64,000 nt of DNA from Octopus sinensis. Lineage: Eukaryota. Location: the NCBI RefSeq assembly GCF_006345805.1, contig NC_043000.1, positions 119,040,001 to 119,104,000 of the forward strand, given 5' to 3'. Below are positions 19,188 through 53,550 of this stretch, piece by piece (positions within the stretch are counted from its first letter, which is position 1; every line of letters starts with the position of its first letter). The notes beneath the pieces are model-generated. The model worked only from the letters and a program-made list of their open reading frames with translations, had not been told where the DNA came from and ran no database searches. A program made the translations under genes and the position numbers.

Positions 19188-19239
<52 letters not shown>

Positions 19240-19299: not shown

Positions 19300-19335
<36 letters not shown>
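19070..19335. repeat. (GAAA)n purine tract upstream of the left gene; shorter mirror at 43105-43250
   Basis: Direct inspection. Confidence 0.93.
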
Positions 19336-21830: not shown

Positions 21831-21904
21831 TTATACAGGCATTGGCATATGGCTACATACATATTCAGACGAATATGGGTAAAACATAAATATATACAAA
21901 TGCA

Positions 21905-23402: not shown

Positions 23403-23944
23403 GACTGTCTATCTATTTTCTCTTTCTAATTTTGTTTCTTTTTCTTTTATTTCTTTTCTTCTTTTCCTTTTTCTTTCTCTCACCACTTGTTATTCTCTGA
23501 GTTTCTTTTCGTTTTCGTTCTCTCGCCTCTGTCTACTAAGGTATTATGTGCGTGTGTGTTTATGCATTTGTATATATTTATGTTTTGCCTATATTTGTCT
23601 GTATATGTATGCAGTCAGGTACCAACGCCTGTATGTTTAGTGTATATAATGTATGTCTATATAGGTTGTTTGGTATGTGCATGTATTGCTAAATGTATAT
23701 GTATTTCAGGATGTTAGTTCTTTGTGAAAGTTTTTTAAACGTTTATATCTTTTAATTGATATAATTGATATAATTTATTTAAATTTATTGTTTTTTTTTG
23801 CCACAAATTACTTACCCTGGGTATTCAGGGCTTCTTCCTTCTACATAATCTTTGATTTAAGGTTTTCTTCGAATATTATAATAATATGATTTTCAACCGC
23901 AATTGTAATTTCATTCAAGCGTTTATTGAAAAGACCGTTAGTTC

Positions 23945-24765
<821 letters not shown>

Positions 24766-24913
24766 CTTTTATGTATTGATTAAGTCTTTTCTTGTTTGGT
24801 TTTAAAATAGGGGTTTTTTGTCTCGAATTATATTATATGATATTTTACTATAAAATTGGATTTAACCCTAAATCTGATTTTTCTCTGTAATTTTGGATTC
24901 ATTCCCTAATATT

Positions 24914-24969
<56 letters not shown>

Positions 24970-26369
24970 GTTTGTATGTGTCTTTCTGACTGTGTTAGTC
25001 TTCCATCACCGTTGAAAACCGTTCCCGCAACTAAGCGGTTCGTCAAAGGATTCCATAAGAATAAGTATTGGGCTTAAGAAATACGTCCTGCCGGTGATTT
25101 TGTCAACTAAATCCCTTCAAGGCGGTGCTCCAGCATGGTCGATCAGTAGGAGAAATGACTTTTTGACGTTTCGAACATAGTTCTTTGTCGGAAAGGAGAA
25201 AGAGAAAAGCCCAAAGAAGTAGAAAGAAATCGCCAACAGCACGTGTGTAGTTACATATACATCACCGTCTTTATGTCCCGGAATATATCACCATATCACC
25301 TTCTTCAGAAATATGCTACAGTAAGTTTCATTCCTAAGAACAACCCCTCTCACCATACCAACTATCGTTTTATCACGCTCTCAGCATCTGAGAGGTGATG
25401 TAGCCAGCCGCGCCCAACACATTAAATGTCTCCCCCTCTGCCATTACCCTCAGTACGACTTTTGCGAGGCAAGGTCAACTGGAGGCTAACTCTCGTACGT
25501 CATTCATTATTGGTTCTCATCCCGGAGAAATTTAATATGAACAGAGATGTTACATTCAACATCAGTAAATCACTTGAACCTGTTTGAAATTCGAAACTCA
25601 GGGGGAAACTGCCCCCCTATGGATCCTAACTGTGTCTTGCATCACTATCTTCTTGTCAGATCACACTGGTTCGTTGTGTTCAGAGATAACTCTCACTCTC
25701 GCCTTCTGTCCGTCTGTCTGTCTCTGGTTCTCTCTCTCTCTCAACTTTGATCATCCTTAAGGTTCAGTTTTAACTCACAGACCCTTAAACAATCCCCCAG
25801 CAACGCCCGCACTTCCCTTCTTTTGAGATGATGGATGACTATTTGAATGAGAGATTTAGGTGTTCTTTCTAGTCGGTCAGTTAGTAAAGTGGAAGCTCTC
25901 TCGCTTACTCGTTCACCACTAGCAACCTTTTCTCCTGTCCATTTATTACAGTGAGCCAGGACGATTGAATATTAAAATATTAAGTGAAAATGCGACTTTT
26001 TCCAGAATTTGGATTTTTTATACGGCAAGCATACCGTCCAGATCTCTAATTTGAGTATAACGGATGTCCTTCCATGTCCCTAACAATCCCGGAGGCCTTG
26101 CAGAGAAGCCGTTCTTTGGTGTATACATATACAGGTCAGCTATTACAGACGAAAGAAATGGGAAGTATACATTAAGCGTAGAGAGGAGGGAGAGAAAAAG
26201 AAAACGAAAGAGAAACAGAAACGGGAAACTAGGGAGAGAAGAGAGAAAAGGAAGAAGTTGCTAGCTCGTATGAAGTTGGAAAAGGAAAAAACACTTAAGA
26301 AAAGACAGTTCACTAAATGTGTGTAACGAACGCACACATAAAATAAAATTACACATACACACACACACA

Positions 26370-26422
<53 letters not shown>

Positions 26423-26989
26423 TTAAGTATATATTTGCATACAAATCCACATATATGATTATGTATGTAAATAATGAAAAATATGTACGCAAATACGTGC
26501 TCACATAAATATAAGTATATACACTATACGTATACATCCATGTACGTATGTACATAAATATAAATATAAACATACACATATACTTAAACACATACACAGA
26601 CGCACACATACACATACATAATCACACCCACAATACACACATACGCAATTGTATATATACAAACAATTTATTAAAGCTACTCAATGGATATAGTACTAAA
26701 ACTACAAATTTACAAAATGCAGCACCATATATAGAAATATCCATGAATTAAATGTAACAATTAAATGGGTTTCTAAAATGCAATGAAATAAAATACAATA
26801 ATAAAATTATAAAAACAAGAAGAATGAACCCCGGTAAATTTTCAGCTTTTCTTAATTTTTTTTTAAAGAATACGTCGAGATATACATTCGCTATCATTGC
26901 GATGCGAAATAACCATACATTACAAATACAAATTCAAAGGTGGCATTCGAAGCTTATTCAAATGTCAACATATATTATTCATATGGAAT

Positions 26990-27715
26990 TTTGTCAGTTG
27001 ATATTTTAAATTTTGTTGCCTACCTACAGGAATTTAAGAGTTTGCGTCTTTTATTAAGAGCGCTATTATCCATACACACACAAGCGCATACTCAGTACAG
27101 AGAGGCATAAATTGCATTTCATGGGCCTTTTATGAGCTCCATGTCTGTAAGCTGATGCTTTATCTGAGATTTTCCATGTTACATTGAAAGGACAAGTTTC
27201 ATTTTCTTTCAGTTCAAAGACATATTTCGCCAAACTAGTCTTTGTCCTATTTTCGGGGTAGCGGCAGGAATTTCAGTGGGAACAAAATCGGGTCTTGAAA
27301 GATTTTTCTGAAGTCCCTGTGTATGTTTTATATTCTTGTGAGCTTTCTATTTGTATTTTGGCCCTATACACAATACCTTTCTCCAGACATTTTCCTTCCA
27401 ACGGACAGGAGGTCTCATCTTTACAATTACAAATCTTCAGATTTGAACCGGCACTCTAGCTATCTGTAATTATTTTAGTGTTGTGTTGGCTAATGCAAGA
27501 GGCGAAGTTTTTACAACAAGAATAGTAATCTTCAGCGTTCTTCTATTAAATATTCTCTAAAATTTATGGCTAAGTAGAAAATGCCTAGAAACTAATTTTA
27601 AGAATTCTCAACCTATATTAGATTTTACGGCCATATTAAATGCTGGGTTGAACCACAAAACCTTTCTAGTTCTAGTTCTACGTGTGGTATTATTGCTAGC
27701 ATTAACTTGGGTGTA
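26990..27715 (-). mobile_element. Penelope-like element (Poseidon-type) C-terminus with GIY-YIG, decayed; mirror of 38030-38760
   Basis: Reverse complement of 38030-38760. Confidence 0.82.
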
Positions 27716-28844
27716 CTGGATCTTCTCAGAGAATCTACTATTCCTTCATGCATTGTTGTAATAGGTTGCAGTATTTTGAAATGCTGTCCCATTCAAAGAA
27801 ATTGATGATATTCGCCTACCTACCTATATATATATATATATATATTTTTAAATTCTTAAAAATATATTTTTCTGTCTATATATATGTACTACGAAACAAA
27901 CATGATTTTTATTGGAATCCTAATAGTTTTTGTTGAATACTTTCTTCAATACTTTCTTTAAACTGTTTTTAATATTTTTTTTAATTTTTATCAAAGAACG
28001 TATATATGTATTTCAGTATATTTGTGACAACCAGCACTCACCACAAAAAAGCTTATACAAAGCTTATATTTTACTTTTAACAATATTTTTCTAAAAAAGG
28101 AAACCGATCAAGTGAATAAACTTCTTTAGAATTGCATTTTCAAATCTTCTTTTATATATAGCAATGTGGAATAAACAGGAATTTTTTTTGTTTCTGGGCT
28201 AGTATGTCATGGTTCAGTGGTTTTTCGGACTGGTCATAGAGTTCAGAATGGTGTGAGTGTGTATGTGTGTCTCTGTGCACGACTTTATGTGTATGTGTAT
28301 GTGCTTGTGTCTGTGTTCATGGGCCGTTTTTAATTGGTCCCAGAGTTTTGTGTGGAGTATGTATGGCTTTGTGTACATTTATCAGGATGGTTTGTGAATA
28401 TGTGTGCACGTTTGTGTGTGTGTATATGTGTGAACGCGAAATAAAAGACTCCAAGAACTAAAGGCAATTCCTCTCAAGAGACATTACCCAGCATATATAC
28501 ACACATATGTACACACACAAACTCAGTCGTTCCCCAGTAAAAATCACACACATACACTCAAAGGAAAGAATCACACACATACACACACACATATATATAT
28601 ATATTTCTTTACTACCCACAAGGGGCTATACACAGAAGGGACAAACAAGAACAGACAAACGGATTAAGTCGATTATATCGATCCCAGTGCGTAACAGGTA
28701 CTTATTTAATCGACCCCGAAAGGATGAAAGGCAAAATCGACCTCGGCGGAAATTGAACTCAGAACGTAGCAGCAGACGAAATACTGCTAAGCATTTCGCC
28801 CGTCGTGCTAACGATTCTGCCAGCTCGCCGCATACACATATATT

Positions 28845-36369: not shown

Positions 36370-37089
36370 GTTTTTTTATGTGGGGGACGTTTTTTTATTG
36401 GTACCAGAGTTGAGTGTGGTGTATGAATACCTCTGCGTATATTTAACAGGATGGTGTGTGTATATGTGTGTGATTTGTATTCGTCAGGGTGTTGTGTGTG
36501 CGTATGTGTATGTATATGTTTGTTCGCAGATGTGTATGTCTGCGTTTGTGTGTGTGAGTGTGTATGTTTGTGTGTGCTTTGTGTTGGTGGGGAAGTTATG
36601 TGTGTACGTGAGTGTGTATATGTGTGTATCTGAGTATGTTTGTGTTTTAATTGTCCTGACGTTGTGTGTGAGCAACCGTATGTGTTTGTGACGGTGCACA
36701 TATATGTGTGTGTTGGTGTGTTGTATTTATCAGGAGTTCTCTGTGTGTCCGTGTATGTTGTGTTATCCGGGTGGTGGGTATGTGTGTGCCTGTACGTTAT
36801 ATGCATGTTGGTACTGAGTATGCGTTTGTGTGTGTGTGTGTGCATATATGTGGGTGTGGTTTATGTAGTTTCCGGGTGTGTGTGCACATGGGTGTTTGTG
36901 TATTGTGTGAGTGTTTTGTGTCGTTTGTATTGTTTGTGTAGTGTGTGTGTATACGTGTGAGTATGTCTATGTGTCTTGTATTTGTCAGGGTGGTGTGTAT
37001 CATTGTGTGCGTGTACATGTTGGTGTGTATGTGTGTGTATGTCTGTGTGTTTGTTAGTGTTTGTTGGACTTGTATAGCTTGCATATATG
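36370..37089. repeat. Degenerate (TG)n-rich low-complexity tract
   Basis: Direct inspection. Confidence 0.85.
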
Positions 37090-38029
37090 TGTATGTGAGA
37101 TTTTTTACTTTGAGTGTATGTGTGATTTTTTACTGGGGAACGATTGAGTTTGTGTGTGTGTACATATGTGTGTATATATGCTGGGTAATGTCTTTCGAGA
37201 GGAATTGCCTTTAGTTCTTGGAGTCTTTTATTTCGCGTTCACACATATACACACACACGAACGTGCATACATATTCACACACCATCCTGATAAATGTACA
37301 CAAAGCCATACATACTCCACACTAAACTCTGGGACCAATTAAAAACGGCCCACGAACACAGACACAAGCACATACACACAAACAGAAACATACACATAAA
37401 GTCGTGCACAGAGACACACACACAAACTCACACCATTCTGAACTCTATGAACAGTCCGAAAAACCACTGAACCATGACATACTAGCCCAGAAACAAAAAA
37501 GAATTCCTTTTCATTCCACATTGCTATATATGAAAGAAGATTTGAAAATGCAATTCTAAAGAAGTTTATTCACTTGATCGGTTTTCCTTTTAAAGGAAAG
37601 TATTGTTAAAAGTAAAATATAAGCTTTGTATAAGCTTTTTTGTGCTGAGTGCTGGTTGTCACAAATATATTGAAATACATATATACGTGCTTTGATAAAA
37701 ATAATAAAAAAATATTAAAAACAGTTTAAAGAAAGTATTGATTGATTGATTCTAGTTTCAGCTCATGAGCTGGGGGCACCGTCATTTGAAGAAAGTATTC
37801 AACAAAAACTATTAGGATTCCAATAAAAATCATGTTTGTTTCGTAGTACATATATATAGACAGAAAAATATATTTTTAAGAATTTAAAAAAATATATATA
37901 TATATATAGGTAGGTAGGCGAATATCATCAATTTCTTTGAATGGGACAGCATTTCAAAATACTGCAACCTATTACAACAATGCATGAAGGAATAGTGGAT
38001 TCTCTGAGAAGATCCAGTACACCCAAGTT

Positions 38030-38760
38030 AATGCTAGCAATAATACCACACGTAGAACTAGAACTAGAAAGGTTTTGTGGTTCAACCCAGCATTTAATAT
38101 GGCCGTAAAATCTAATATAGGTTGAGAATTCTTAAAATTAGTTTCTAGGCATTTTCTACTTAGCCATAAATTTTAGAGAATATTTAATAGAAGAACGCTG
38201 AAGATTACTATTCTTGTTGTAAAAACTTCGCCTCTTGCATTAGCCAACACAACACTAAAATAATTACAGATAGCTAGAGTGCCGGTTCAAATCTGAAGAT
38301 TTGTAATTGTAAAGATGAGACCTCCTGTCCGTTGGAAGGAAAATGTCTGGAAAAAGGGATTGTGTATAGGGCCAAAACACAAATAGAAAGCTCACAAGAA
38401 TATAAAACATACACAAGGACTTCAGAAAATTCTTTCAAGACCCGATTTTGTTCCCACAGAAATTCCTGCCGCTACCCCGAAAATAGGACAAAGACTAGTT
38501 TGGCGAAACATGTCTGAGAATTGAAAGAAAATGAAACCTGTCCTTTCAATGTTACATGGAAAATCTCAGATAAAGCATCAGCTTACAGACATGGAGTTCA
38601 TAAAAGACCCATCAAATGCAATTTATGCCTCTCTGTACTGAGTATGCGCTTGTGTGTGTATGGATATTAGCGCTTTGAATCAAAGACGCGAACTCTTAAA
38701 TTCCTGTAGGCAGGCAACAAAATTTAAAATGTCAACCGACAAAATACCATATGAATAATA
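38030..38760 (+). mobile_element. Penelope-like element (Poseidon-type) C-terminus with GIY-YIG, decayed
   Basis: RKVLWFNPAFNMAVKSNIG*EFLKLVSRHF..HKF*RIFNRRTLK, GKCLEKGIVYRA..YKTY..SENSFKTRF..H, TSLAKHV*ELKE..VTWKI, KCNLCL, LNQRRELLNSCR. Confidence 0.85.
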
Positions 38761-39338
38761 TATGTTGACATTTGAATAAGCTTCGAATGCCACCTTTGAA
38801 TTTGTATTTGTAATGTATGGTTATTTTGCATCGCAATGATATCGAATGTATATTTCGAAGTATTCTTTAAGAAAACCTTCGACTGTCTTACATATCATTT
38901 TCAAGCTGAAAATTTACCGGGGTTCATTTTTCTTGCTTTTATCATTTTATTATTGTATTTTATTTCATTGCATTTTAGAAACCCATTTAATTGTTACATT
39001 TAATTCATGGATATTTCTATATATGGTGCTGCATTTTGTAAATTTGTAGTTTTAATATTATATCCTTTGAGTAGCTTTAATAAATTGTTTGTATATATAC
39101 GTTATGATCTAGATGTTTTTATGCGTATGTGTGTATTGTGGGTGTGATTATGTATGTGTATGTGTGCGTCTGTGTATTTGTTTAAGTATATGTGTATGTT
39201 TATATTTATATTTATGTACATGGATGTATACGTATGGTGTATATACTTATATTTGTGTGAGCACGTATTTGCGTACATATTTTTCATTATTTACATACAT
39301 AATCATATATGTGGATTTGTATGCAAATATATACTTAA

Positions 39339-39403
<65 letters not shown>

Positions 39404-39879
39404 TATATGTCTGTGTGTGTGTGTGTGTGTGTAATTTTATTTTATGTGTGCGTTCGTTACACACATTTAGTGAACTGTCTTTTCTTAAGTGTTTTTTCTT
39501 TTTCCAACTTCATACGAGCTAGCAACCTCTTCTTTTTCTCTCTTCTCTCCCTAGTTTCCCGTTTCTGTTTCTCTTTCGTTTTCTTTTTCTCTCCCTCCTC
39601 TCTACGCTTAATGTATACTTCCCATTTCTTTCGTCTGTAATAGCTGACCTGTATATGTATACACCAAAGAACGGCTTCTCTGCAAGGCCTCCGGGATTGT
39701 TAGGGACATGGAAGGATATCCGTTATACTCAAATTAGAGATCTGGACGGTATGCTTGCCGTATAAAAAATCCAAATTCTGGAAAAAGTCACATTTTCACT
39801 TAATATTTTAATATTCAATCGTCCTGGCTCACTATAATAAATGGACAGGAGAAAAGGTTGTTAGTGGTGAACGAGTAAG

Positions 39880-40529
39880 ATTACTTGGAATTTGGTAAAG
39901 GATGAGTTGTCCGAGAAAAAAATCATTCTAGGGACCAGTGCTATAGGCCTTACCTCCACTCTAAACGCTTTGCAACGTTTCTTTTTGAATGTAGTGGTTA
40001 TCTGATTGCAGCCCTCCCATAAAATCCGGCTTTATGCATCTCCTGGTGAAGTGTTTTTGTGGAAACTGGGTTTACGAGGTGGTCTTTAAGCTCTGCAATA
40101 ATTTTGGGTGCTGTACTTTTGTGATCCTTCCTAACAATTCGCGTAAGAATCCGCCGGTCCCTATCTGAAAGTTTTGGTTTTCTTTCGAAGCTTTGTTTCA
40201 ACGAGGAGGTTTTTCCCTCTTTCTCAAAGGCTGTGATTACTTTCGAGACAGTACACCAAACATTTCGGCTGTTTTCGTTACGCCAGCGCCTGCCATACGA
40301 GCACCAACAATTTGATCTCTTTGAAAGACCGATAGATCGGTCATTTTAATGAATTTTAATTATCTTTTTCTGATGATATCTGAAAAAACCCCAGCAATTT
40401 TAGCAAAACATTAAGCAACACTAATAATAAATATATAAATAAACATAAAGATAAACAAGCTTTTGACGGTTTTATAGATATTTCAAAATTATGATGCTAG
40501 GTGTTTCCATTATTTTGACCAACCCCTGT
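39880..40529 (-). mobile_element. Tc1 5' fragment, mirror of 21905-22556
   Basis: Reverse complement match; ORF KQSFERKPKLSDRDRRILTRIVRKD. Confidence 0.88.
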
Positions 40530-42648
40530 GTATGCATTTGTATATATTTATGTTTTACCCATATTTGTCTGAATATGTATGTAGCCATATGCCAATGCCT
40601 GTATAATTCTTGGCTCTCCGTCGGTTACGACGACGAGGGTTCCAGTTGATCCGATTAACGGAACAGCCTGGTCGAGAAATTAACGTGCAAGTGGTTGAGC
40701 ACTCCACAGACACGTGTACCCTTAACGTAGTTCTCGGGGAGATTCAGCGTGACACAATGTGTGACAAGGCTGGCCCTTTGAAATACAGGTACAACAGAAA
40801 CAGGAAGAAAGAGTGAATGGTATTGTGAAAGAGTACAGTAGGGTTCGCCACCACCCGCTGCCGGAGCCTCGTGGGGCTTCAGGTGTTTTCACTCAATAAA
40901 TACTCACAACGCCCGGTCTGTGAATCGAACCCGTAAGTTTGCCACCCTAATCACTGGGCCATTGCGCCTCCACGATGAATGTAAATAACAGAAAGAGATT
41001 GCTGTTTTCTGATGTGCATTGTTTGAGGATAATAGAATGGACATTGTCCACTCGAAGCGACCAGATTTAACTAGTGTATGTTGTGAGATACTTCATACAC
41101 GCGAAGCAAAGAAGGTGGTTTCCTCTGCGGGTATACTGCTTCTTGAACCATCGTCATTGTAAAGTTGCATGAAGAAAGTTTCTATAAAGTTTGCAGAAAT
41201 AAGTTTAGTAAGTGACCACTTTAAGTCTAAGACTCACTAAGGCTTTCAACCGGAGCGAGGTACGGACCTACCTGTTGCAGTTCCAAAGATGGTCTTACAG
41301 GTGTTGCAGTACCGCGTGCAGCGTGTAGTGCTAGCGATTTTTCTCCAGGTGTGGGGTTCTGTGTTCTTTACATGAATTGTTGCAGGGCATCTATTATCGA
41401 ACTACTTGTAGGATTGAGGTCATGTTTGCATGTGGATTGCTTTCAATCTCATGCCTACCTATTTCTCATAACTCACAAGTAAAGTACATTTATTGCCAGG
41501 GATAACTGGTATGAAAACCGATGGAGCTATAATCAGTTAGCTGACATGAAATGTTATTGTTTGCAGAAGGTGGGTGTGGTGTAGATCTAAGTCATAGCTG
41601 AGCATGCGCGGACTAGTTACGCTAAAGCAATCGTTGGATGACCCTCCAAGTGCATAGATGTGAAGTGAGATAAACACTTTCGAAGTAGGAAGAAATACAG
41701 TCGAAAATTGGTAGCTTAAGTTCACAGAGTGCTTGAGGTAACATATACCTTGTAGGAGGGCGAAGAAAGAAAGTCTGAGTCAGTTAAGTGGAAGTCCTTG
41801 TTGCCGATGTCCAAGAGAATATGTGAGTGTAAATGAATGAAATCAGTATAGTTACAGGCAACTTTAGGCAGCTAGCTGGCAGAATTGTTAGCATGCCGGG
41901 CAAAATGCTCAGCGACATTTCGTCTGTCTTTATGATCTGAGTTCAAATTCCGCCGAGGTTGACTGCCTGTTATCCTTTCGGAGTCGCTAAATTGAGTACC
42001 AGTTGAGCAGTGGGATCGATGTAATCGACTTACCCCTTCCACCGGAGTTTGCTGGCTTGTGCCAAAATTTGAAATCACTATAGTTTCGGGCAGCACTTTC
42101 TGGAGTGAGCTTTGAGTAAAGAGTCTAATCTGGACAGCGAAACTAATCTATTAATAAAGACGAAAATATTCGCGCCTTGAGAAGATCAGAATGTATGATA
42201 TGCTAGCCTGTTAAGAAGTGATGTACAACGTTGAGGTTGGATCGGAATACAGGGATGTTAGAGAAGCGGAGGAGGTAATTGTCTAGAGTATTTAGCGTTA
42301 GTTTTTGACATCTTGGGAAGTATAGACGGGAAGTTATGACAATCTCCAGTCACGAACCTGTTCCATACGCTTGCAACAGCGAACTACACTAAAGTCTACT
42401 AAATGGAAGAGACCACGTCTAACACCCCAAAGAATTTGGAATTTTAATCGCAGAAGAAAGAAATAAATATATACTGTGATCGTTATTTTTAGTCGAATGT
42501 AATGCACTGAAATTACTCTACAAATATTCTTGGTAAAGCCTGAAAGGCCCGCAGTTCCACCGATCTGTATTCGTGGCCTTGAGGTGGGAAAAATTTGCTG
42601 CGTAAGTGAGGCGACATAGAATCGGTAGGGAATGGAAACGTGGAAAGT

Positions 42649-42927
42649 AATTGCAGCGTGGAAGGTGTTTATAAGCCATTTAAGAAGCGCACACAAACCG
42701 TTAGATTCACTTCAACATTTAAATTTATTTTGCCAAAATATTTTCATCGCTTTCAGACCGCGACCTGATCACTGACAAAATTCCATGCTGTACGGAATTT
42801 TGTCAGTGATCAGTTTGCGGTCTCAAAGCGACGAAAATATTTTGGCAAAATAAATTTAAATGTTGAAGTGAATCTTACTGTTTTTGTGTTTCCTAAATGA
42901 CTTATAAACACCTTCCACGCTACAGTT
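42649..42927. mobile_element. Fold-back PLE palindrome with hammerhead-like motifs, mirror of 19518-19796
   Basis: Arms invert around ~42785-42793; GUGAUCAG core and GAAAAUAUUU on both strands. Confidence 0.7.
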
Positions 42928-43218
42928 GTTTTCATTCTAGCACACGATCTTAGATCAGGTTACTTGCTATGCAAGTACATCTCCGTGATTTGGAAAGTGT
43001 TTTCTGTTATCAAAACGTCCTTGTGAAGCATGACATTGCATTCTACATTCACTCTCACATTCACAAAAACTTGTTACCGAAAAAAAAAAACTCGTCAAAC
43101 GCCTGCTCTCTTTCTTTCTTTCTTTCTTCCTTTCTTTCTTTCTTTCTTTCTTCCTTTATTTTTTCTTTCTGTCTTCCTTTCTTTCGATCTTTCTTCCTTT
43201 CTTTTTTCTTTCTTTCGT

Positions 43219-43250
<32 letters not shown>

Positions 43251-43490
43251 TACAATAAGGCTTGTCCCTCTGCATAGACGATGTGAGAGAATGGTGGGGG
43301 GAATTTTAAAAAAAGTTATGCATAACCTCCCCATTAATAGTCATTGTGGTTCGTTTTATGTTACAAAGTGTATAAAAGCAATAAAGAAATCAAGCAATTT
43401 CAGTCGCAGCCTAAACTTCAGACTTTATGCATAACACTTTAATCAATATATATATATATATACATTTATATTGACAAAGAGTTCATCGAA

Positions 43491-44064
43491 ATGGGCTTTC
43501 AAGGTTTTTACCTGAAACGCCAACACACATTTTGGCTGCCATTAATTTTGCTCCATGTCTTATTTATTATTCCATCATATTCTCAGGAAAGCTGTACAAA
43601 AGACGGTGAATATAAGTGCCATGAAACAGACGATTCCAAATTCTATCATTGTACAGGACCTAAACACGGCATATTGCAATCTTGTGGGAAAATACTACGT
43701 TTCAATCCACAGTATAACGTCTGTGACTGGCCAGTCGATGGCGATAGCTTTTGCAAAACACAGAGAGATCAGTCAAAAACCACCCGTGATGTTGGAGCTA
43801 CAAAGTATGTAGTTACTACTTCTAAACCATCAAATTCTCTGAAAAGCTGTAGAAAAAGCAATGAATATAAGTGCCATGAAACAAACAATTACCAATTCTA
43901 TCTTTGTACGGGATTTGAAACAGGCGCATTAAAAACTTGTCCTGAAGGAACAGATTTCAATCCAGCAGCTAGCATCTGTGCCTGTTCAAATATTCCAAAC
44001 GCTTTCAAGTGCCACAACCAGGATGATCAGTCAAAAACCACTACTTCTAAACCCCAACTCACTG
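43491..44064 (+). CDS. Exon 1 of right gene: signal peptide, two CBM14 domains, Thr-rich linker (191 aa + 1 nt); spliced product 508 aa
   Basis: ATG 43491, same N-terminus as the left copy (34/35 aa), two Cys-rich FNP/CDWP domains, donor ACT G|gtaagt at 44064/44065. Confidence 0.9.
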
Positions 44065-45934
44065 GTAAGTAATATATTTTCAAGAATTTTATGTACCAAA
44101 TCTCTTCTTTCAGTGATGTTTTTATCTCTTGCCACAGTAGTAACTCAATAAGAAATAAGCGATCTCTGATTGTCGAACTAGAGTTATATATAATCCAGTT
44201 TACAACACTCTGAATTTGGTATTTATTCAAAACTGCTGTTCTTTCTCTTATCTTTTAAGCTTAAAATATTTCCTATTCTAAGCAGTCATTTATCGATTTT
44301 ATGTTGCTTCTTACGAACGACCATTTCTTAAAATATTAAACGGCGTAAAACATGAGTTTATATCCGAAATTGTAATTCACCACCTGTTAACGATCTTGTA
44401 TACAAGTTTGATAGATTATTTTAGATAAGAGGTATTGTATATAGTATAGGATATAGTCATTTTAACTACTATATTTCATACTGAAAAGGTGACTTTGGAC
44501 TCAATTCTCGGACAGTGTTGCGGGTTGGGTTTTTGAATAGGGTATTTTATCTCCTGTTGCTCCAGTAAACTCTGATAATCAGGATCAACATAGTTTTGAG
44601 TCATAAAATAATGAGAGTAATTGGCGATAAAATGAGTAATACTGTCACAACTAGAAGTGACGGGGGCGGAAACCCAAAATGAAAGTATATTCTGTAATAT
44701 TCTGCATAGATAACAACAAAAAAACGCCACCGAAGCAATGACAGAACAGATTTAAACTAGAAAATAAATTAAACTTGAAAACAATGTTTGCAAGAAATTT
44801 TTCTTTATAAGCAAAACATGTCATATGAAATCAGATTCGTGAATGACAGTTCATGGTTTCCGAATATACTTCTCCAAAAATACCCCTGCAGATACGATGA
44901 ATATAAAGCACTGCCCATTCTGCATTGTCGCCTTGGCTGTTTTTGTTTATTGGCGAGCACCCATCTCACTTCGATTGTTTAAACATTCAAATAACGGGAT
45001 AAAATGGAGAGTTAAGTTTGTATTCCACAAACATCAGCTCAAGTGGTCTGTGTAATATACATTGTCTGATATGAATGCATCAGATAGGTTAAGTTTAGTT
45101 AAGAGCCATTCAGCTAAAATGAGGTATTGTTAACATTGGTGGAAATCTCCCCATAATATTACAAAAGAACTGAAGGCGGAGAGCTAGCATATTCGTTAGC
45201 ATGTTGGGCTAAATGCTCAGCGCCTTTCTTGCGTCTTTATGCTCTGAGTTCAAATTCTGCCGAGGTCTGCTTTGCCTTTCATCCTATCCGGTTTGATAAA
45301 ATATATACCATTATATTACTGTGTAATATACATTGACTGATATAAATGCGTCAGATAGCTTAAGTTTAGTTAATAACCATTCAGCTAAAATGAAGTATAG
45401 TTAACGTTGATGGAAATCTCTCCACGATATTAGAAAAGAACTGCGTTCACTGATATTCTTCGATAAGCAAGCCATGGAGTCGCTTTAACAGCGGCGTTCA
45501 CCGGGTGTATTTCTATGCATAACATACACGTTCAGATCTATGTATTTCCACGAAGAATTTCAGTGATCTTTGAAATGATTACTTTATAGTGTAATATAAA
45601 TATTTTCTGTTCTCCGATAGTAAAATGGTTATGTTTTCGAGATAACTGCATCATTCTGCTCTCTTGAAAATCAACCTTCCAAAAATCCCCACGGTAAATG
45701 AAATTTTTGCGCAGTTTTCTCTGATTCCACAGATTTCCCCTATTGTTTGCATAGTTTCAATTTTACCCCCGTATCAATGGTTGAAACTCCTGTTTCTTTT
45801 TTTATTATTGTAGATCAATAGCTCTAGGCCTCATTCCATATAAGAGTTAATTAGCAGATGTGTGTTCATATCCATTTTGAAAAAAAACCGTCCATCTTTT
45901 GATTTGATTTGCTTTGTTGTTTTTTACCTTGCAG

Positions 45935-46887
45935 GTCCCTGTCAACCAGAACATTGCAAGCTACCGAAATGTAAATGTCCTGGGCCGGAAATTCCAGGCT
46001 CATTGCCAACAAATGCAACTCCGCAGATAATTCTATTGACTTTTGACGACGGAATTAATGAGCACAATATCGGTTATTACAGGGATTTGTTTGGTTCTAA
46101 CATAACAAATCCAAACGGCTGTCCTATTCAAGCAACATTTTTCGTTTCCGGCGATTATACTATTTATAAAAATGTGAAAGAATTATATGGCCAAGGACAT
46201 GAAATAGCTTCTCATAGCAAAACGCATAAACTTCCACACGCCTATTGGTTGAATTCTGATTACGAGACTTATACCGATGAAATAGTTGGCATGAAAAACT
46301 GGCTTATTGAAAAGGCCGATATTCCAGCAAAAGATATTCGTGGAATGCGCTCACCGTTTCTTTCAATGGGAAAAGATGCCCAGTTCAAAATGTTGAAAGA
46401 TAATAGATTTTACTACGATAGTTCGATGGTTACAGGTTCAGTTTCTACTACTACAGAGATACCAGTATGGCCCTTTACACTTGATTACCCGGTTATCAAA
46501 AAATATTGCCTACTTAAATACTGTCCAGAGAAATCATATCCAGGATTATGGGAAGTCCCACTTATACGTTGGTACAATGACGAAGGAAGTGCTTGTTCAA
46601 TGGCTGATTCCTGTATAATTCCTCAAAACTCATCGGCTGTCGTAAATTACTTGAAAGACAACTTTAATCGCCATTATAAAAGAAATAGGGCACCTTTCGG
46701 CATATTTTTGCATGCACCTTGGCTTAAAAATAACTTAAAACCATTGAAGAAATTTTTGGAAGAAGTTGCCCTCAAAAACGATGTATGGATTGTGACTGTG
46801 TCTCAAGCTTTGCAATGGATTCAGAATCCAGTTCCATTGGACAAAATTTCTGAATTCAGAAATTGGAAATGTAAATTAAATAACTGA
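45935..46887 (+). CDS. Exon 2A of right gene: CE4 chitin-deacetylase domain (317 aa)
   Basis: Acceptor ttgcag|GT in phase 1; motifs TFDDG, HSKTH, RSPF, YDSS, CSMADSC, GIFLH; stop TGA 46885-46887; AATAAA at 47026-47031. Confidence 0.93.
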
Positions 46888-47109
46888 GGAGAAACAAACA
46901 AGATGATGGATATTTTATGATTCAAAATTGAAGTATTTAAATATATACTTGTTCTCGGAATTTTTACATTTTTACCATTTTTACATTTTTAACATTTCCA
47001 TTTTTGCAGTTTTATCGCTTAATTGAATAAATTGAGATATACTGAAATATATTCTTGCTGCACTTCATAAATCAATTCATAAACAAATAACACATATAAA
47101 TAAATATGC

Positions 47110-47660
47110 GTGTATATTATTTGTATGTATATATAGGTGTATATGTTTGTATGTATACATAGGCGTGTATATGTTTGTATGTACATATATATATGCATTT
47201 AGATATATGTATATATGTGTGAATGTATATATATATGTGTATATATGTGTGTGTGTTTATGTATATATATAATGTGTATATGTATGTATATATATGTGTG
47301 TATATATAGGTATGTATATATGTGTATATATGTATATATATGTCTATATATATATGTGTATATATATGTGTATATATATGTGTATATATATGTGTATCTA
47401 TATGTGTGTATATATATATGTGTGTATATATATATATATTCGTATATATATGTATATGTATGCATAATGGTGTATATATGCAAATATGTATGTATATATA
47501 TGCGTACATATATGTGTGTATGCATATATGTGCATATATATGTGGATATATGTGTGTATGTATGCATATATATATGTATGTGTTTACGTAGTCATATATA
47601 TATGTATGTATGCATATGTGCGTGTGTATGTATATGTGTGCATGAATGTATATGTGTATA
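47110..47660. repeat. Degenerate (TA)/(TG) microsatellite tract (right arm only)
   Basis: Direct inspection. Confidence 0.93.
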
Positions 47661-48076
47661 CAGTGGCGGCCAAAATGTTCAGAACGGCATTGTTTTCGTC
47701 AGAAAAGTAGATATAATTTTTTTTATCAAAGTTGTTTTATATTCTGTAATTTTCACCGACAATAAATACGATATTATTTGTTATTGCTTGAGATTTTGAT
47801 GTAATTTGAGAGGATAATACAAAAGTTATGGATGATTTAGTGATTTACTGCAAAACCCATGGCGGTCAAAATGATCAGAACGGTTGCTTTTACTCCGTGA
47901 TTTAGTATATTTGACCGGCGAACTCTAATAATTTGAATTTGTTTACGTGACGGTTCGTTTACTAAACATTAGTAAGAATATTTGCAGTTTACTTTGTTAA
48001 TATAATGCCACTTACTCCGTTACCAATTCGTCAGCAGATTATTAAGCTTCGAAGGAAGGATAATTTAAGTATTGGA
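47660..48076 (+). mobile_element. 5' end of another Tc1-like element (right arm only)
   Basis: TA+CAGTGGCGGCCAAAATG TIR-like start; ORF start MPLTPLPIRQQIIKLRRKDNLSIG, cut off at the junction with the duplicated intron. Confidence 0.6.
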
Positions 48077-48718
48077 TAAAATAAATACCATTATATTACT
48101 GTGTAATATACATTGACTGATATAAATGCGTCAGATAGCTTAAGTTTAGTTAATAACCATTCAGCTAAAATGAAGTATAGTTAACGTTGATGGAAATCTC
48201 TCTACGATATTAGAAAAGAACTGCGTTCACTGATATTCTTCGATAAGCAAGCCATGGAGTCGCTTTAACAGCGGCGTTCACCGGGTGTATTTCTATGCAT
48301 AACATACACGTTCAGATCTATGTATTTTCACGAAGAATTTCAGTGATCTTTGAAATGATTAATTTATAGTGTTATATAATTATTTATTTTTCTCCGATAG
48401 CAATAATCGTATAAATGTTTATGTTTACAAGATAACTGCATCATTCTGCTCTCTGTTGATGAACAACCTTCCAAAATCCCCACGACAAATGAAAGTTTTG
48501 TGCCGTGTTCTCTGATTCCACAGATTTCCCCTATTGTTTGTATAATTGCATTTTTACACCCGTATCAATGGTTGGAACTCCTGTTTCGTTTTTTATTGTT
48601 GTAGATCAATAGCTCTAGGCCTCATTCCATATAAGAGTTAGTTAGCAGATGTGTGTTCGTATCCATTTAAAAAAACTTTCATTCTTTGGTTATCTTTCAT
48701 GGTTCATTTACTTTGCAG

Positions 48719-48750
48719 GTCCCTGTCAACCAGAACATTGCAAATGTTAA
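48719..48750 (+). pseudogene. Stub of exon 2B: internally deleted positional counterpart of the left catalytic exon
   Basis: Acceptor ttgcag|GTCCCTGTCAACCAGAACATTGCAA joins directly to ATGTTAATTAAATAAC, i.e. the first and last bases of the left exon 2 (~920 bp missing). Flanks match the left arm. Confidence 0.9.
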
Positions 48751-49311
48751 TTAAATAACTGAGAAGGAGAAACAAACAAGATGATGTGTATTTTTCGATT
48801 GAAAATTTAACTATTTAAAATGTCACTTATTGTTCTCGGAATTTTGCCATTCTTTGGGTGTTTTTTAATAGTTTGCTCTTCATCAATCTTTTACATATTT
48901 TCTTATTCACCTTTATGAAATTTTATCGCTTAACTGAATAAGTTACGTAGAAATACGTAGAAATGTATTACTACCACTCTTAAGAAATCAATTGAAAATT
49001 TTTAAAGCTTTGCTAAGTAATCTTATTAAAATATGCCATTATAAAATTATGAATTGCTTAATTTTTATTACAAACTCGTATGAAATTTGAAAATATTTTA
49101 TATCTTATATATATTAGATGAAATACGAATTAAGACTGAATTTCTAGTAGATTTATACAGTTCATTATGTAAATATACTTCGCTTCAAAAAGACGAGGTT
49201 TATAAATGACTACAATTGCCTTCAAACTTTGCTTTTCTGACCTGAACATCAATGTTTTGAAACTGACCAATTTTCCATTACATTTCTACTTGTTAGACGG
49301 AAAATGAAAGG

Positions 49312-49354
<43 letters not shown>

Positions 49355-50764
49355 AGTGGCTATAGGATTGATCTCTGGTAAAAATATTAGGGTACATATT
49401 GTCTGTGTTTGTCCCCATCACTGCTTGACAACTGGTTTTGATGTGCTCATGTGCTTCGCGGCTCAGCAAAGAGACCGATAGAATAATCACCAAGCTTTAA
49501 AAAGACAAGTGCTGGGGTTGATTTCGTTCGTCTAAAATTCTTGAAAGTGATGCCTCAGCTTGGCTGCAGTCTAATGATTGAAACAAGTAAAAGAAAAGAT
49601 ATTCTTGAATAGAAGTAAGAGAAATTGAAAGTTTAGTAATCTACGAAATGAAATATAAAACAATGGAATCTGAGAGAACAAAACTTGTATGTAAACTGAT
49701 TGAAATAATGAGGTTAATTTTATGCTGTGAGAGCAAGAAATAGATCGAATAAAAATAGTTACTTTGAAAACTTAGCAAAATACTGTAAGCCATTTGGTAA
49801 AGTGCAGTATAGGTTATTCAATGTAGGGTATTTAGTGTATAATGTTGCCGCAACAACTACGAATAATTAATATAACGATTTCAAATTTTGGTACAAGTCC
49901 ATCAAGCTCGGGGAAGGAGATAAGTCTATTACAATGACGGCAGTGTTCAACTGATACTTATGTTATCGACCCCGGAAGGATGAAAGGTAAAGTCGACCTC
50001 AACGGAATTTGAACTCAGAATGTAAAGACGGATGAAATGTCGCTAAGCATTCTGTTGGGCGTGCCAACGATTCTGCCAGCTCGCCGCTTTACGAATAGTT
50101 ATATAACAAGAAAATTTCTTTGACGCAGTCTACGTATAAATGTGAGGTGAATTCTAGATATATCTTAAATGGTGTGTTGATATGTTACACTCTCTCCATC
50201 TTACGACTGCTCTTCACGAACACAAAATAGTACCAGACGCTAAACATAAATATACTGAGTTCATAAAACCAGTACGGGTTGTTTAATTTTACACTGTATC
50301 ATGAGAGTAAGAAGTACCATTCGAAGCTTTGGCATGTGGCACGAGAAGGAAAGAAACGACTATCCACCGGCCGGCTCGATCGAGCTCGTGTGTGTGTTAT
50401 GCTCCAAATTATTTGTTTCGACGTCAGAGCGAACGATTGGAACGTGATGCGGGTAAGCGTTACTAAGATACCAGAAGCTGACGATGACCGTTGCAGCACA
50501 TCTGCGCGAGCAGATATTGAAGCCACTGGATTTTCAAGTGATCTCTTCTTCTCTTCTACGTTTTTGAGTTATTCTTTTAACCCTGTTATGCCTGGTAAAA
50601 GGACTCTCTGAGCCGTTTTTTTATTATTATTTTCATAACTTTCGAAAGAAGATTTTTCTCTGAAACTGGGTTACTTAGCCTGAAATTTATCCTGCTAAAA
50701 GCTCATATCACTGATTTTGAAAAAAGTTTTCTTCGTTGCCCTAGAAACGGTAGGAGTTGAACAG

Positions 50765-50989
50765 GTGGTATATCTCTCTTTTCTCTCTTTTACTTGTTTC
50801 AGTCATTTGACTGCGGCCATGGTGGAGCACCGCCTTTAGAGCAAATCGACCCTGAGACTTATTCCTTGTAAGCCCAGTACTTACTCTATCGGTCTCTTTT
50901 TGCCGAACCGCTAAGTTACGGGGACGTAAACACACCAGCATCGGTTGTCAAGCAATGCTAGGGGGACAAACACAGACACACAAACATAT

Positions 50990-51071
<82 letters not shown>

Positions 51072-51218
51072 GACAGGCTTCTTTCAGTTTCCGTCAACCA
51101 AATCCACTCAAAAGTCAATTTTCGGCCCGAGGCTATAGTAGAAGACACTTTCCCAAGATGCCACGCAGTGGGACTGAACCCGGAACCATGTGGCTGGTAA
51201 GCAAGCTACTTACCACTT
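50765..51218 (-). mobile_element. SINE family A, mirror of 12064-12524
   Basis: Reverse complement match. Confidence 0.88.
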
Positions 51219-52552
51219 AATTTTTCTGTCTGGTTAAATAAAATTTGATTATACAATAGAAACAATAGCAAAATTGCTGTTACAAAAAAAATATTTGTTT
51301 GCTACTGATGTATATTCTCGCCAAATTTCATATCATAGTATGAGTAGTTCCTGGAAACTTTCAACAAATAGAAAGGCAAAATGTTTCTTGTTTTAAATTG
51401 GGTAAATTTGATGACGTCATTTTTAAAATTATTGAAATTTTTTTTTTCCTGTGCTGTACCCTTATCCCTGTAAAGTTTCATGGTCATTGTCTTACTGGTT
51501 TTGGAAGACATTTTGAACACTATAGGAGACCTAAATTTTAGCTCATCTGAGAACAACTGATGATGTCATCAGAAGAATGGCCGACGTCAACAAGAATTTT
51601 ATAATGCAGAAATATTTACCTATCAATTGTCTATACATATGTCAACTTCCATTGTCATAAATTTAGTAGTTCAGGAATAAAGGAGGCGAGTGCCCTGAGA
51701 TCCACGTCCAACAGGCTTATGGAGCCCCTAAAACACCAGGGTTTTATAGGGCTAGAATGTATCTTGCAAGCCGAGCTGTTTCATACATTTTTCTCAAGGC
51801 ATTTCTGGTCAAAGGACTTTTGGCCCCAGCACACTCTCCTTATTTGATGGACCAGCTGCAGAATAGCTGAGATTTGTAAAAGTAAATTTATTGCCTCACA
51901 CCACATTTCCATTTCACTCTCCATCAGACCAGCAGGTCACTTCCGATCGTTTCTAAAAGAACACTCACTATAAAGATTCCTTTTCATAAACGCTTTCGAG
52001 ATCGTTTCTTCAAATGATTTGACACTGAATGATTTTTGGAAAACGCATTTTAATGTTCCTGATGCAGTGTTAAGGATTGTTGCAACATAAATGCAGCCTT
52101 GGCCTGTTGGAAACATACAGTTACAAATCTGCACAAAAGGCGGCAGGGTTCTTGTCTTAACAATCACTAACATGTTTTCATGGACAGGAACTGTTTTCCG
52201 TAGAGAATATTCTGTCTGAGCAGCTCTTTCAAGGAGAACATTTCTCACCTAGATACACTGGAAAAGTGCTAAAAAAGTGCAATAAAAATTGTCTGTCGTT
52301 CCTCTGCTGGTTAGTTTACTGCGGCGAACGGTGGTTTAATTTAGCAGGAATGAACAAAGAACTGATACAAACAACGATAACATGTATGCAAGGAATAAGG
52401 TTTCTCTTAACCTGGCCTATTGGAATGTGAGAAGCAGATAGCCCTGAAAGGAGCACATAAATGTGAAACAAAATGGAAGATATAGTACTCGAATGCCAGA
52501 GGTAGAGGACTATGCTTTACTGAAAAGCAGCAGATATATCACAAAACTTATT

Positions 52553-52963
52553 CTCTTTTACTCTTTTACTTGTTTCAGTCATTTGACTGCGGCCATGCTG
52601 GAGCACTGCCTTTAAACGAGCAACTCGACCCCGGGACTTATTCTTTGTAAGCCCAGTACTTATTCTATCGGTCTCTTTTGCCGAACCGCTAAGTGACAGG
52701 GACATAAACACACCAGCATCAGTTGTCAAGCAATGCTAGGGGGACAAACACAGACACCCAAACATACAGGCACACACACACATATATGTATTTACATATA
52801 TACGACGGGCTTCTTTCAGTTTCCGTCTACCAAATCCGCTCGCAAGGCAATGGTCGGCCCAAGGCTACAGTAGAAGACACTTGCCCAATGTGACACGCAG
52901 TGGGACTAAACCCGGAACCATGTGGCTGGTAAGCAAGCTACTTACCACACAGCCACTCCTGCG
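52553..52963 (-). mobile_element. SINE family A, mirror of 10316-10726
   Basis: Reverse complement match. Confidence 0.88.
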
Positions 52964-53550
52964 TATATATACATACATACATATACATACATATATACAT
53001 GTTATATAAACATACATATATTTGCATACATACACACACACACACACACACACACATTGTTGTGTCTGAGGAGTGTAATTTCTTTTAAGTGCTTTATTAT
53101 TTAACACACTCGCAGGTAAAGCTCCCATTCATTTAGTCATTTCCTAAAATTTTCTCTGCGTCATGCAACCTTTTCAATAGTCGTTGACTCTGTCCTTTAT
53201 CTGAGCTACGTTCTTTTTGTTTGTTTGTGCGCAAATGTGTGGGTCAGTGTGTGTGTGCATACCTAATCCAAAGACGAAATTTCACACAATATGATATATA
53301 TATATAAAATTAGAAAAAACCCACCTTTTATCAATTCAAAATGAACAATTAAATTACACCATCTAGAAAATTACATATAATAGAAATATTAAAATTAAAA
53401 TGACAATAAAATGTCAATGATTAAGTAAATGGCATATAATAATAATAATAATAATAATAAAAATAATAATAAAATAATAAATAATTATTAGTATTTTTTG
53501 CAATTTACTTACTCATTGACATTTTATTGTTATTTTCATTTTAATATTTC

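What the first reader, a model, noticed from the sequence alone, without database searches (positions are those of the whole stretch)
45935..46887. Deacetylase paralogs: identical ends, hypervariable blocks next to the catalytic motifs
Seen (manual alignment): 219/315 aa identical overall. The first 39 aa (38 identical) and last 32 aa (31 identical) are nearly the same, while the core is ~61%. Zero-identity blocks lie directly after TFDD (AVLRRTFV vs GINEHNIG) and near-zero after TF.VS (HSETTDAAL vs GDYTIYKN). All metal and catalytic residues are kept in both. Known: CE4 substrate specificity is set by loops around the active-site groove. Inference: conversion homogenises the exon edges while the loops encode different deacetylation patterns.
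Basis: partly seen in the sequence, partly recalled or inferred. Interest (0 to 1): 0.7.

Follow-up and report, generated by a model that had tools for sequence, protein, structure and literature searches.

The report
Octopus chitin deacetylase paralogs, mosaic exon
Two neighbouring octopus chitin-deacetylase genes share near-identical regulatory and targeting parts but carry catalytic exons of different ancestry, one copied in from a third gene nearby and one from a fast-evolving lineage; this is an ordinary, if tidy, case of gene-family mosaic evolution.

Summary

The window is Octopus sinensis chromosome CM016862.1. The two genes lie in a 16-19 kb inverted duplication whose arms differ by only 1.5-3%. 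The catalytic exons did not diverge in place:
- The focal exon sits on a 3.1-kb block 98% identical to the 3' part of a third gene, B', about 65 kb away.
- Microhomology marks both junctions of the block.
- A deleted remnant of the A-type exon lies just downstream.

The "hypervariable" blocks are conserved in the B type, from O. bimaculoides to silkworm enzymes. The A lineage is what changed: 76 nonsynonymous against 14 synonymous changes, with a cleft tyrosine and a cysteine pair lost but every catalytic residue kept.

Conserved ends with a diverged core appear in every paralog pair, so constraint is the main cause. Short conversion tracts are supported by tree incongruence (p=0.003). Clean synonymous divergence, however, is not significantly uneven (p=0.19). 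Differences are not enriched in active-site-face loops.

The parts
45935..46887 (+). Focal CE4 (NodB) catalytic exon, B type. It is the terminal exon of the right-arm gene, 316 codons plus stop.
   Evidence: ORF and splice acceptor. Pfam PF01522 at 37.4 bits. 94-95% amino-acid identity to gene B' of O. sinensis and O. vulgaris. It keeps 81/81 family-conserved positions.
14860..15806 (-). A-type CE4 catalytic exon of the left-arm gene, 314 codons plus stop. Over the compared parts it matches O. sinensis XP_029635419.2.
   Evidence: tblastn of the window's own A CE4 exon and exon 1 against locus L003 gives 100%. L003 is identical to window 30205-4860. PF01522 at 24.0 bits, against a cut-off of 23.1.
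43491..44064 (+). Exon 1 of the right-arm gene: signal peptide plus two CBM14 chitin-binding domains. The donor is CTCACTG|GTAAGT.
18277..18835 (-). Exon 1 of the left-arm gene: signal peptide plus two CBM14 domains.
44976..48077 (+). 3.1-kb block derived from the B' gene: the 3' part of the intron, the CE4 exon, the 3' flank and a microsatellite. It replaces about 0.9 kb of the arm's intron.
   Evidence: 96.4% identity including gaps, and 1.9-2.1% substitutions, to B' of both O. sinensis (L004 42298-45385) and O. vulgaris (L002 13049-16141). Junction microhomologies are TGTTT and GAT.
48072..49209 (+). Remnant of the right arm's original A-type unit: intron end, a mini-exon (48719-48750, GTCCCTGTCAACCAGAACATTGC|AAATGTTAA) and the 3' flank. 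305 codons of the exon have been deleted in frame.
   Evidence: 96-97.7% identity to left arm 16458-15782 and 14873-14401.
37088..53307 (+). Right arm of the inverted duplication.
   Evidence: blastn against the left arm gives 92-97% identity including gaps, and 1.5-3.1% substitutions.
9979..28585 (-). Left arm of the inverted duplication. It is orthologous at 99% to O. vulgaris OX597817.1 at about 48.28-48.30 Mb.
45259..45550 (+). Intron tract (-676..-385 from the exon) that is 98-100% identical between the A and B units. This is younger than the speciation-level divergence.
   Evidence: site patterns 8:0.
43622..43721 (+). Island in exon 1 (first CBM14) where the arms drop to 55-68% identity. 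Positions 43622-43671 are 98% identical to another cluster exon 1 (L004, about 10001-10345).

Best explanation
The window holds two members of an Octopus sinensis cluster of secreted chitin deacetylases. Each has a signal peptide, two CBM14 chitin-binding domains in exon 1, and a metal-dependent CE4/NodB catalytic domain in exon 2. The genes lie head to head in a young inverted duplication whose arms differ by 1.5-3%.

Their catalytic exons belong to two older lineages. The B type is the canonical, conserved form. The A type split from it before the O. sinensis / O. bimaculoides divergence and then evolved fast at the protein level only.

The right-arm gene originally carried an A-type exon. 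It acquired its B exon when a 3.1-kb piece of the nearby B' gene was copied into its intron, with microhomology at both junctions (inferred: template switching). The A exon downstream was later deleted.

The nearly identical exon ends arise mainly because the Cys-rich N-terminal segment up to TFDD and the C-terminal strand and helices are the most constrained parts of the whole family. Short gene-conversion tracts between the A and B lineages add to this, in the intron at -700..-385 and in the first 60 nt or so of the exon.

Shown here: the structure, the ancestry and the rates. Inferred: the copying mechanism, conversion, and any functional difference between the enzymes.
For: - Species and locus: locus L003 is identical to the window.
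- Arms.
- B block is B'-like at 98%, and equally distant from B' of both species. B'_sin and B'_vul differ by 0.5%.
- Junction microhomology.
- A-type remnant.
- Core dS: A against B is 0.26, above 0.146 for B_sin against B_bim and below 0.37-0.44 for B against C/D.
- Relative rate in the core: the A branch has 14 synonymous and 76 nonsynonymous changes, while the B path has 10 and 24. The synonymous difference gives p=0.54 and the nonsynonymous difference p=2e-7.
- B keeps 81/81 conserved positions. A keeps 72/81, having lost N44, a Tyr, G88, C222 and C228.
- The chance that the A reading frame stays open under neutral change is 0.012.
- Conserved ends with a diverged core in all paralog pairs.
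- Incongruent site patterns, p=0.003. Silent-site end runs, p=0.036.
- Fold: pLDDT is about 96 for both models, and the A model matches 5Z34/5ZNT at TM 0.92.
Against: - Clean synonymous divergence does not differ significantly between ends and core (p=0.19), and the conversion signal rests on few sites.
- The order of the three events (inverted duplication, B' capture and the B'-like tract in the left-arm intron at 17294-16509) cannot be resolved, because all show 1.5-3% divergence. A model with tandem B and A exons before the duplication, followed by reciprocal loss, fits almost as well.
- No protein matching the right-arm B gene appeared in the protein database.
- Since capture, the B exon has 10 nonsynonymous and 0 synonymous changes, at about the neutral rate. 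It may be unconstrained or unexpressed.
- No A-type orthologue was seen in O. bimaculoides proteins.
- The right arm was not checked in O. vulgaris.
Confidence: 0.72

Rival explanations
1. The two inverted-duplicate copies diverged where they sit. Gene conversion keeps the exon edges identical, while diversifying selection drives the active-site loops apart.
For: The ends are near-identical at the DNA level, with 4 differences in 117 nt and 2 in 96 nt. Site patterns at the ends group A with B. The blocks are catalytic-face loops.
Against: The arms differ by 1.5-3%, but the exon core differs by 12-30%. The B exon is 98% identical to the B' gene and conserved in O. bimaculoides. A deleted A-type exon lies in the same arm. 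Only A changed. Differences are not enriched in those loops.
Confidence: 0.07
2. Constraint alone, with no gene conversion. The ends are identical simply because they are the most constrained parts of the protein, and the rare shared derived states are parallel changes.
For: Every paralog pair shows the pattern. For example, B_bim against C_bim is 95% / 67% / 89%. Clean synonymous differences do not differ significantly (p=0.19). The longest silent run is not significant.
Against: Site patterns are 6:1 at the exon ends against 5:20 in the core (p=0.003). The intron tract at -700..-385 runs 8:0 and is 98-100% identical, more alike than the orthologues are across species. Other mosaic tracts exist in the same cluster, in exon 1 and in the left-arm intron at 97% to B'.
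Confidence: 0.15
3. The A type is a decaying gene under relaxed constraint rather than an enzyme with a new specificity, and the window's B copy is likewise drifting. The pattern would then carry no functional meaning.
For: The A-branch omega is about 1.0-1.4 and is not significantly above 1 (p=0.15). A has lost 9 of 81 conserved positions, including a Cys pair. A_sin against A_vul has 8.5 nonsynonymous and 1.5 synonymous differences. The B lineage has 10 nonsynonymous and 0 synonymous changes. No protein matching B was returned by the search.
Against: The A reading frame is intact in two species after about 90 substitutions (P=0.012 under neutrality). All catalytic and metal residues are kept. 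Beta strands are 87% conserved. The predicted fold is confident. A is annotated as a gene in both species.
Confidence: 0.2
4. Before the inverted duplication the gene carried both exons in tandem (B, then A), perhaps as alternative terminal exons. The two arms then lost one exon each.
For: The right arm still shows B followed by the A remnant. The left-arm intron carries a B'-like tract at 97% that ends just upstream of the A unit. The 98-100% identical intron repeats could mediate such a deletion.
Against: Just after the left junction, the right arm matches B' almost exactly over the printed ~50 bp, where the left arm differs at several positions (read by eye; the enclosing 90-bp window is 95.6% against 87.8%). 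That fits a later, arm-specific import. There is no transcript evidence for alternative use. The two models are not cleanly separable by divergence.
Confidence: 0.25

Closest known systems
Bombyx mori chitin deacetylases BmCDA8 (PDB 5Z34) and BmCDA1 (5ZNS/5ZNT), animal CE4 enzymes
   Same: Sequence E-values are 4e-73 and 1e-70 over the whole exon. The A model superposes at TM 0.92. The five motifs are the same, including the insect-type motif 4 (xMxDx) and motif 5 (FxH). The Cys-rich N-terminus, the loop insertion and the C-terminal region are also shared (PMC6463723). As in insect CDAs, CBM14 domains lie upstream.
   Different: Identity is only 32-45%. The octopus genes have two CBM14 domains and no LDLa domain. 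The A type lacks the cleft Tyr (BmCDA1 Tyr242 position) and the Cys pair flanking motif 4. The +1 subsite residue (BmCDA8 Gln125) is His in B and Ile in A.
Interlocus (ectopic) gene conversion among tandem or inverted paralogs
   Same: Identity is mosaic, with short tracts that group paralogs within a species against their orthologues. Several independent tracts occur in the cluster.
   Different: The signal at silent sites is weak. Most of the contrast between the ends and the core is explained by protein constraint.
Microhomology-mediated templated insertion (FoSTeS/MMBIR-type) leading to exon capture or replacement
   Same: A 3.1-kb donor segment from a gene on the same chromosome is inserted, with 5-bp and 3-bp microhomologies, and replaces about 0.9 kb of the recipient.
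   Different: The mechanism is inferred from the junctions only. The left junction lies in sequence that is itself homologous to B', so a homologous switch or a simple deletion is also possible.
Subsite-capping loop model of microbial CE4 chitin deacetylases (VcCDA, ArCE4A)
   Same: It carries the idea that loops around the CE4 active site set the deacetylation pattern. Here blocks 1 and 2 are loops following beta1 and beta2 on the catalytic face.
   Different: Animal CDAs lack those microbial loops and have a long, open cleft (PMC6463723). The differences between A and B are spread over helices and other loops as well.

Membership tests
CE4 / NodB-homology chitin deacetylase (animal type) | Pfam PF01522 match above the gathering score | tested here: met
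   B scores 37.4 bits and A scores 24.0 bits, against a cut-off of 23.1. A only just passes.
CE4 / NodB-homology chitin deacetylase (animal type) | Motif 1 TFDD (catalytic base plus metal Asp) and motif 2 H[ST]xxH (two metal His) | tested here: met
   TFDD is present in both. HSKTH (B) and HTQTH (A) align to HSISH and HSITH of 5Z34 and 5ZNS (PMC6463723).
CE4 / NodB-homology chitin deacetylase (animal type) | Motif 3 RxP[YF], insect-type motif 4 (xMxDx) and motif 5 ([LFV]xH, catalytic acid) | tested here: met
   RSPF, SMADS/SMADE and FLH are present in both. The flanking Cys pair of motif 4 is lost in A.
CE4 / NodB-homology chitin deacetylase (animal type) | (beta/alpha)7 barrel fold like the solved insect CDAs | tested here: met
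   AF2 pLDDT is 95.6 (A) and 96.0 (B). Foldseek on the A model against 5ZNT/5Z34 gives TMq 0.92 and E of about 1e-34.
CE4 / NodB-homology chitin deacetylase (animal type) | Measured deacetylase activity on chitin or chito-oligomers | not testable with these tools
   This needs recombinant protein. BmCDA1 itself is inactive without a partner (PMC6463723).
Interlocus gene conversion tract | Tree incongruence between the tract and its flanks, with paralogs grouping within a species in the tract | tested here: met
   Exon ends run 6:1 against the core at 5:20, Fisher p=0.003. Intron -700..-385 runs 8:0.
Interlocus gene conversion tract | Lower synonymous (silent) divergence inside the tract than outside | tested here: inconclusive
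   3/65 against 16/141 same-amino-acid codons, p=0.19. Silent end runs give p=0.036, and the longest silent run gives p=0.96.
Templated insertion / exon capture from a paralog | An identifiable donor of near-identical sequence, and defined junctions with microhomology | tested here: met
   The donor is B' (L004 42298-45385 and L002 13049-16141), with 1.9-2.1% substitutions. The junctions are TGTTT and GAT.
Mutually exclusive / alternative terminal exons | Two intact homologous exons in one gene, with transcripts using either | tested here: not met
   The second (A-type) exon in the right arm is reduced to a 32-nt remnant. The left arm has one exon only. No transcript data were available.

The most novel reading that the evidence does not exclude
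The octopus CDA cluster behaves as a cassette system. Exon-1 modules (signal peptide plus chitin-binding domains) and CE4 catalytic exons are repeatedly exchanged between neighbouring genes by templated copying and conversion. The A type would then be a genuinely neofunctionalised deacetylase, with its cleft Tyr and one disulfide removed and its +1 subsite changed, placed under the same promoter and targeting module as a canonical enzyme.
Probability: 0.15. Interest if true: 0.55.

Novelty: new member of a known kind. Interest (0 to 1): 0.32.

Why it matters
The finding gives a worked example, resolved to the base pair, of how a catalytic exon can be swapped between neighbouring paralogs while the promoter, signal peptide and binding domains stay the same.

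It also flags an octopus-specific, fast-evolving chitin deacetylase (the A type). Its altered cleft could be tested for a different deacetylation pattern, which is of some interest for cephalopod chitin biology and for enzymatic chitosan design.

It does not open a new kind of system. Gene conversion, exon capture and accelerated paralog evolution are all well known.

Tried and rejected
1. Look-ups of P0001 and P0106 found no gene on record. The O. vulgaris right arm and any annotation of the B gene could therefore not be checked.
2. I tested for conversion from A into B after the capture. Four of the 10 B-specific changes match A, which is not significant. Rejected.
3. I tested for enrichment of A/B differences in catalytic-face loops. 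None was found.
4. NG86 gives a core dS of 0.26 against 0.06-0.08 at the ends. This looked decisive, but it is inflated by multi-hit codons. The clean same-amino-acid count removes significance.
5. I rejected the idea that the two exons are alternative exons of one gene.
6. I rejected a haplotype or assembly duplicate as the source of the arms. The arms differ more than the two species do, and they differ in structure.
7. A literature search for octopus chitin deacetylases found nothing specific.

Full report
**What is there**

The window is eukaryotic. It is AT-rich and carries microsatellites and retroelement ORFs. It is Octopus sinensis chromosome CM016862.1, positions 119,040,001-119,104,000: locus L003, fetched through the annotated protein XP_029635419.2, is 100% identical to window 30205-4860.

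The focal interval 45935-46887(+) is the terminal exon of a two-exon gene.
- Exon 1 (43491-44064) encodes a signal peptide and two CBM14 chitin-binding domains.
- Exon 2 encodes a CE4/NodB deacetylase domain.

The partner gene lies on the minus strand, with exon 1 at 18835-18277 and the CE4 exon at 15806-14860. I call the left exon A and the focal exon B.

**Check of the observation**

- 219 identities in total;
- 38/39 at the start and 31/32 at the end;
- 150/242 (62%) in the core;
- 0/8 identities after TFDD, and one match after TF.VS.

The catalytic residues are intact in both copies. This was confirmed by alignment to the solved Bombyx enzymes 5Z34 and 5ZNS/5ZNT, using the motif definitions of PMC6463723.

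**Genomic context changes the picture**

The two genes sit head to head in an inverted duplication, right arm 37088-53307 against left arm 28585-9979. The arms are 92-97% identical including gaps, and differ by 1.5-3.1% in substitutions. Only the CE4-exon segment drops, to 84%.

Three facts show that the exons did not diverge in place.

1. The whole stretch 44976-48077 is B'-like. It comprises the 3' part of the intron, exon B, the 3' flank and a microsatellite.
   - It is 96.4% identical (1.9-2.1% substitutions) to the 3' part of another cluster gene, B'.
   - It is equally distant from B' of O. sinensis (L004, about 65 kb from the focal exon on the same chromosome; the fetched locus starts 37 kb beyond the window end) and B' of O. 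vulgaris (L002).
   - The two B' orthologues differ from each other by only 0.5%.
2. Both junctions show microhomology.
   - At the left junction the right arm follows the left arm up to CGATTGTTT, and follows B' from TGTTTAAACATTC.
   - At the right junction it follows B' up to TATTGGAT, and follows the arm from GATAAAATAAATACC.
   - The block replaces about 0.9 kb of arm intron.
3. An A-type remnant lies immediately downstream, at 48072-49209.
   - It is 96-98% identical to the left arm's A-type intron end and 3' flank.
   - The exon itself is reduced to GTCCCTGTCAACCAGAACATTGC|AAATGTTAA, a clean in-frame loss of 305 codons.

The right-arm gene therefore once carried an A-type exon and received its B exon from B'. 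All of these events show 1.5-3% divergence. They predate the sinensis/vulgaris split (0.5-0.9%), and they cannot be ordered among themselves.

**Which copy changed**

The B-type sequences are not variable.
- GINEHNIGYYRDLF and FFVSGDYTIYK are identical in the O. bimaculoides orthologue.
- They are recognisable in Argonauta and in Bombyx BmCDA8 and BmCDA1 (TFDDGINVINIE, VSHEYTNY).

I compared both copies at the 81 positions that are at least 80% conserved in 59 distant homologues.
- B keeps all 81.
- A keeps 72. It has lost Asn44, a Tyr of the YTxY element, Gly88, and both Cys flanking motif 4, among others.

The first Tyr of the YTxY element aligns to BmCDA1 Tyr242, which PMC6463723 describes as the only exposed hydrophobic residue of that cleft. 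The BmCDA8 +1 subsite residue Gln125 is His in B and Ile in A. The +2 residue Ser241 is kept in both.

A relative-rate test in the core, polarised with C_bim and D_sin, gives these counts:

| Lineage | Synonymous | Nonsynonymous |
|---|---|---|
| A branch | 14 | 76 |
| B path | 10 | 24 |
| Difference | p=0.54 | p=2e-7 |

The A-branch omega is about 1.3-1.4, which is not significantly above 1 (p=0.15). Even so, an open reading frame after about 90 random substitutions has a probability of only 0.012. The beta strands remain 87% identical, and the predicted fold is confident (pLDDT 95.6; TM 0.92 to 5Z34/5ZNT). A is therefore a maintained but rapidly changing enzyme lineage, known here only from O. 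sinensis and O. vulgaris.

**Age of the split**

Core dS values:

| Comparison | dS |
|---|---|
| A vs B | 0.24-0.28 |
| B_sin vs B_bim | 0.146 |
| C_bim vs D_sin | 0.145 |
| B vs C/D | 0.37-0.44 |

The clean same-amino-acid counts agree, at 11-13% against about 7%. In the core, A therefore left the B lineage before the sinensis/bimaculoides speciation.

**Why the ends are identical**

There are two components.

*Constraint.* Every paralog pair shows conserved ends and a diverged core. For example, B_bim against C_bim is 95% / 67% / 89%, and B_sin against D_sin is 87% / 67% / 94%. The contrast is mainly nonsynonymous: dN is 0.27 in the core and 0.013-0.023 at the ends.

*Conversion.* Using C_bim as outgroup, I counted sites that group A with B_sin against sites that group B_sin with B_bim:

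| Segment | A+B_sin : B_sin+B_bim |
|---|---|
| Intron -700..-385 | 8:0 |
| Intron -384..-3 | 1:7 |
| First 116 nt of the exon | 5:1 |
| Core | 5:20 |
| Last 96 nt of the exon | 1:0 |
| 3' flank | 4:10 |

Exon ends against core gives Fisher p=0.003. The intron tract is 98-100% identical between the A and B units, which is more alike than the orthologues are across species.

- Clean synonymous differences are 3/65 at the ends against 16/141 in the core, p=0.19.
- In a GENECONV-like permutation on 50 silent polymorphic sites, the end runs give p=0.036 and the longest run is not significant.

I conclude that short conversion tracts are likely, but that they are secondary to constraint.

Other mosaic tracts in the cluster make exchange plausible:
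- a 100-bp island in exon 1 where the right arm matches another cluster exon 1 at 98%;
- a 0.8-kb tract in the left-arm intron that is 97% identical to B'.

**Structure**

Block 1 is the loop after beta1 plus the first turn of alpha1. Block 2 is the loop after beta2 plus the start of alpha2. Both are therefore on the catalytic face.

Across the domain, however, the A/B mismatches are spread as follows:

| Structural class | Mismatch |
|---|---|
| Beta strands | 13% |
| Loops after strands | 32% |
| Helices | 35% |
| Loops after helices | 42% |

The divergence is general to the surface and is not focused on the active site.

**Caveats**

- No protein matching the right-arm B gene appeared in the database search.
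- Since capture, the B exon has accumulated 10 nonsynonymous and 0 synonymous changes, at roughly the neutral rate. It has 15 nonsynonymous and 0 synonymous differences from B'_vul, p=0.03. It may be unconstrained, or it may be under positive selection.
- The alternative history, tandem B and A exons before the duplication followed by reciprocal loss, is not excluded.
- The right arm was not examined in O. vulgaris.

**Verdict**

This is a new member of a known kind: animal CE4 chitin deacetylase paralogs shaped by exon capture, short-tract conversion and lineage-specific acceleration. Interest is modest.

Noticed in passing
window 29620-31497 (ORFs 29936-30421 and 30556-31497, + strand): A 69-bp (23-residue) tandem repeat array lies in the spacer between the two arms. 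It matches Pfam STPRs (PF21107, E=1.5e-10). In O. vulgaris the corresponding region is annotated as part of a 1875-residue protein.
   Followed up: partly
window 43622-43721 (right-arm exon 1, first CBM14): The arms are 98-100% identical around this island, but inside it they drop to 55-68%. Positions 43622-43671 are 98% identical to the exon 1 used by isoform X2 of the B' locus (L004, about 10001-10345). This is a second module of foreign ancestry in the same gene.
   Followed up: partly
window 45937-46884 against L002 14012-14959 and L004 43260-44207: The focal B exon differs from B' of O. vulgaris by 15 nonsynonymous and 0 synonymous changes (p=0.03). Ten of these changes are derived on the B lineage. 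No protein matching the right-arm gene was found in the database.
   Followed up: partly
L004 14350-15251 and L004 133-1077: The O. sinensis cluster holds further members. One is a frameshifted CE4 pseudogene (E). Another is an apparently intact D gene, orthologous to O. bimaculoides C (dS 0.145). The NCBI isoform models of B' reach across 29 kb to use the exon 1 that lies next to the pseudogene.
   Followed up: no
window 17294-16509 (left-arm intron): This tract is 97% identical to the B' intron (L002 11821-13147). It is flanked by intron sequence that is only 77% identical upstream, and by the A unit at 84% downstream. It is either an older conversion or part of a larger import from B'.
   Followed up: partly
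window 994-2106(+), 4078-4605(-), 61771-62622(-), 53630-54433(-): These are retroelement debris. There is one RVT_1 reverse-transcriptase ORF (E=3e-21). There are also ORFs with a GIY-YIG endonuclease domain (E=1e-6, plus a weak 3e-3), which suggests Penelope-like elements.
   Followed up: partly
window 24-3019, 8359-9016, 47117-47800, 39113-39640: Long TA/TG-rich microsatellite arrays give spurious ORFs of 130-300 residues (MYVYIYIY...). The array at 47117-47800 belongs to the B'-derived block and is shared with the B' locus.
   Followed up: no
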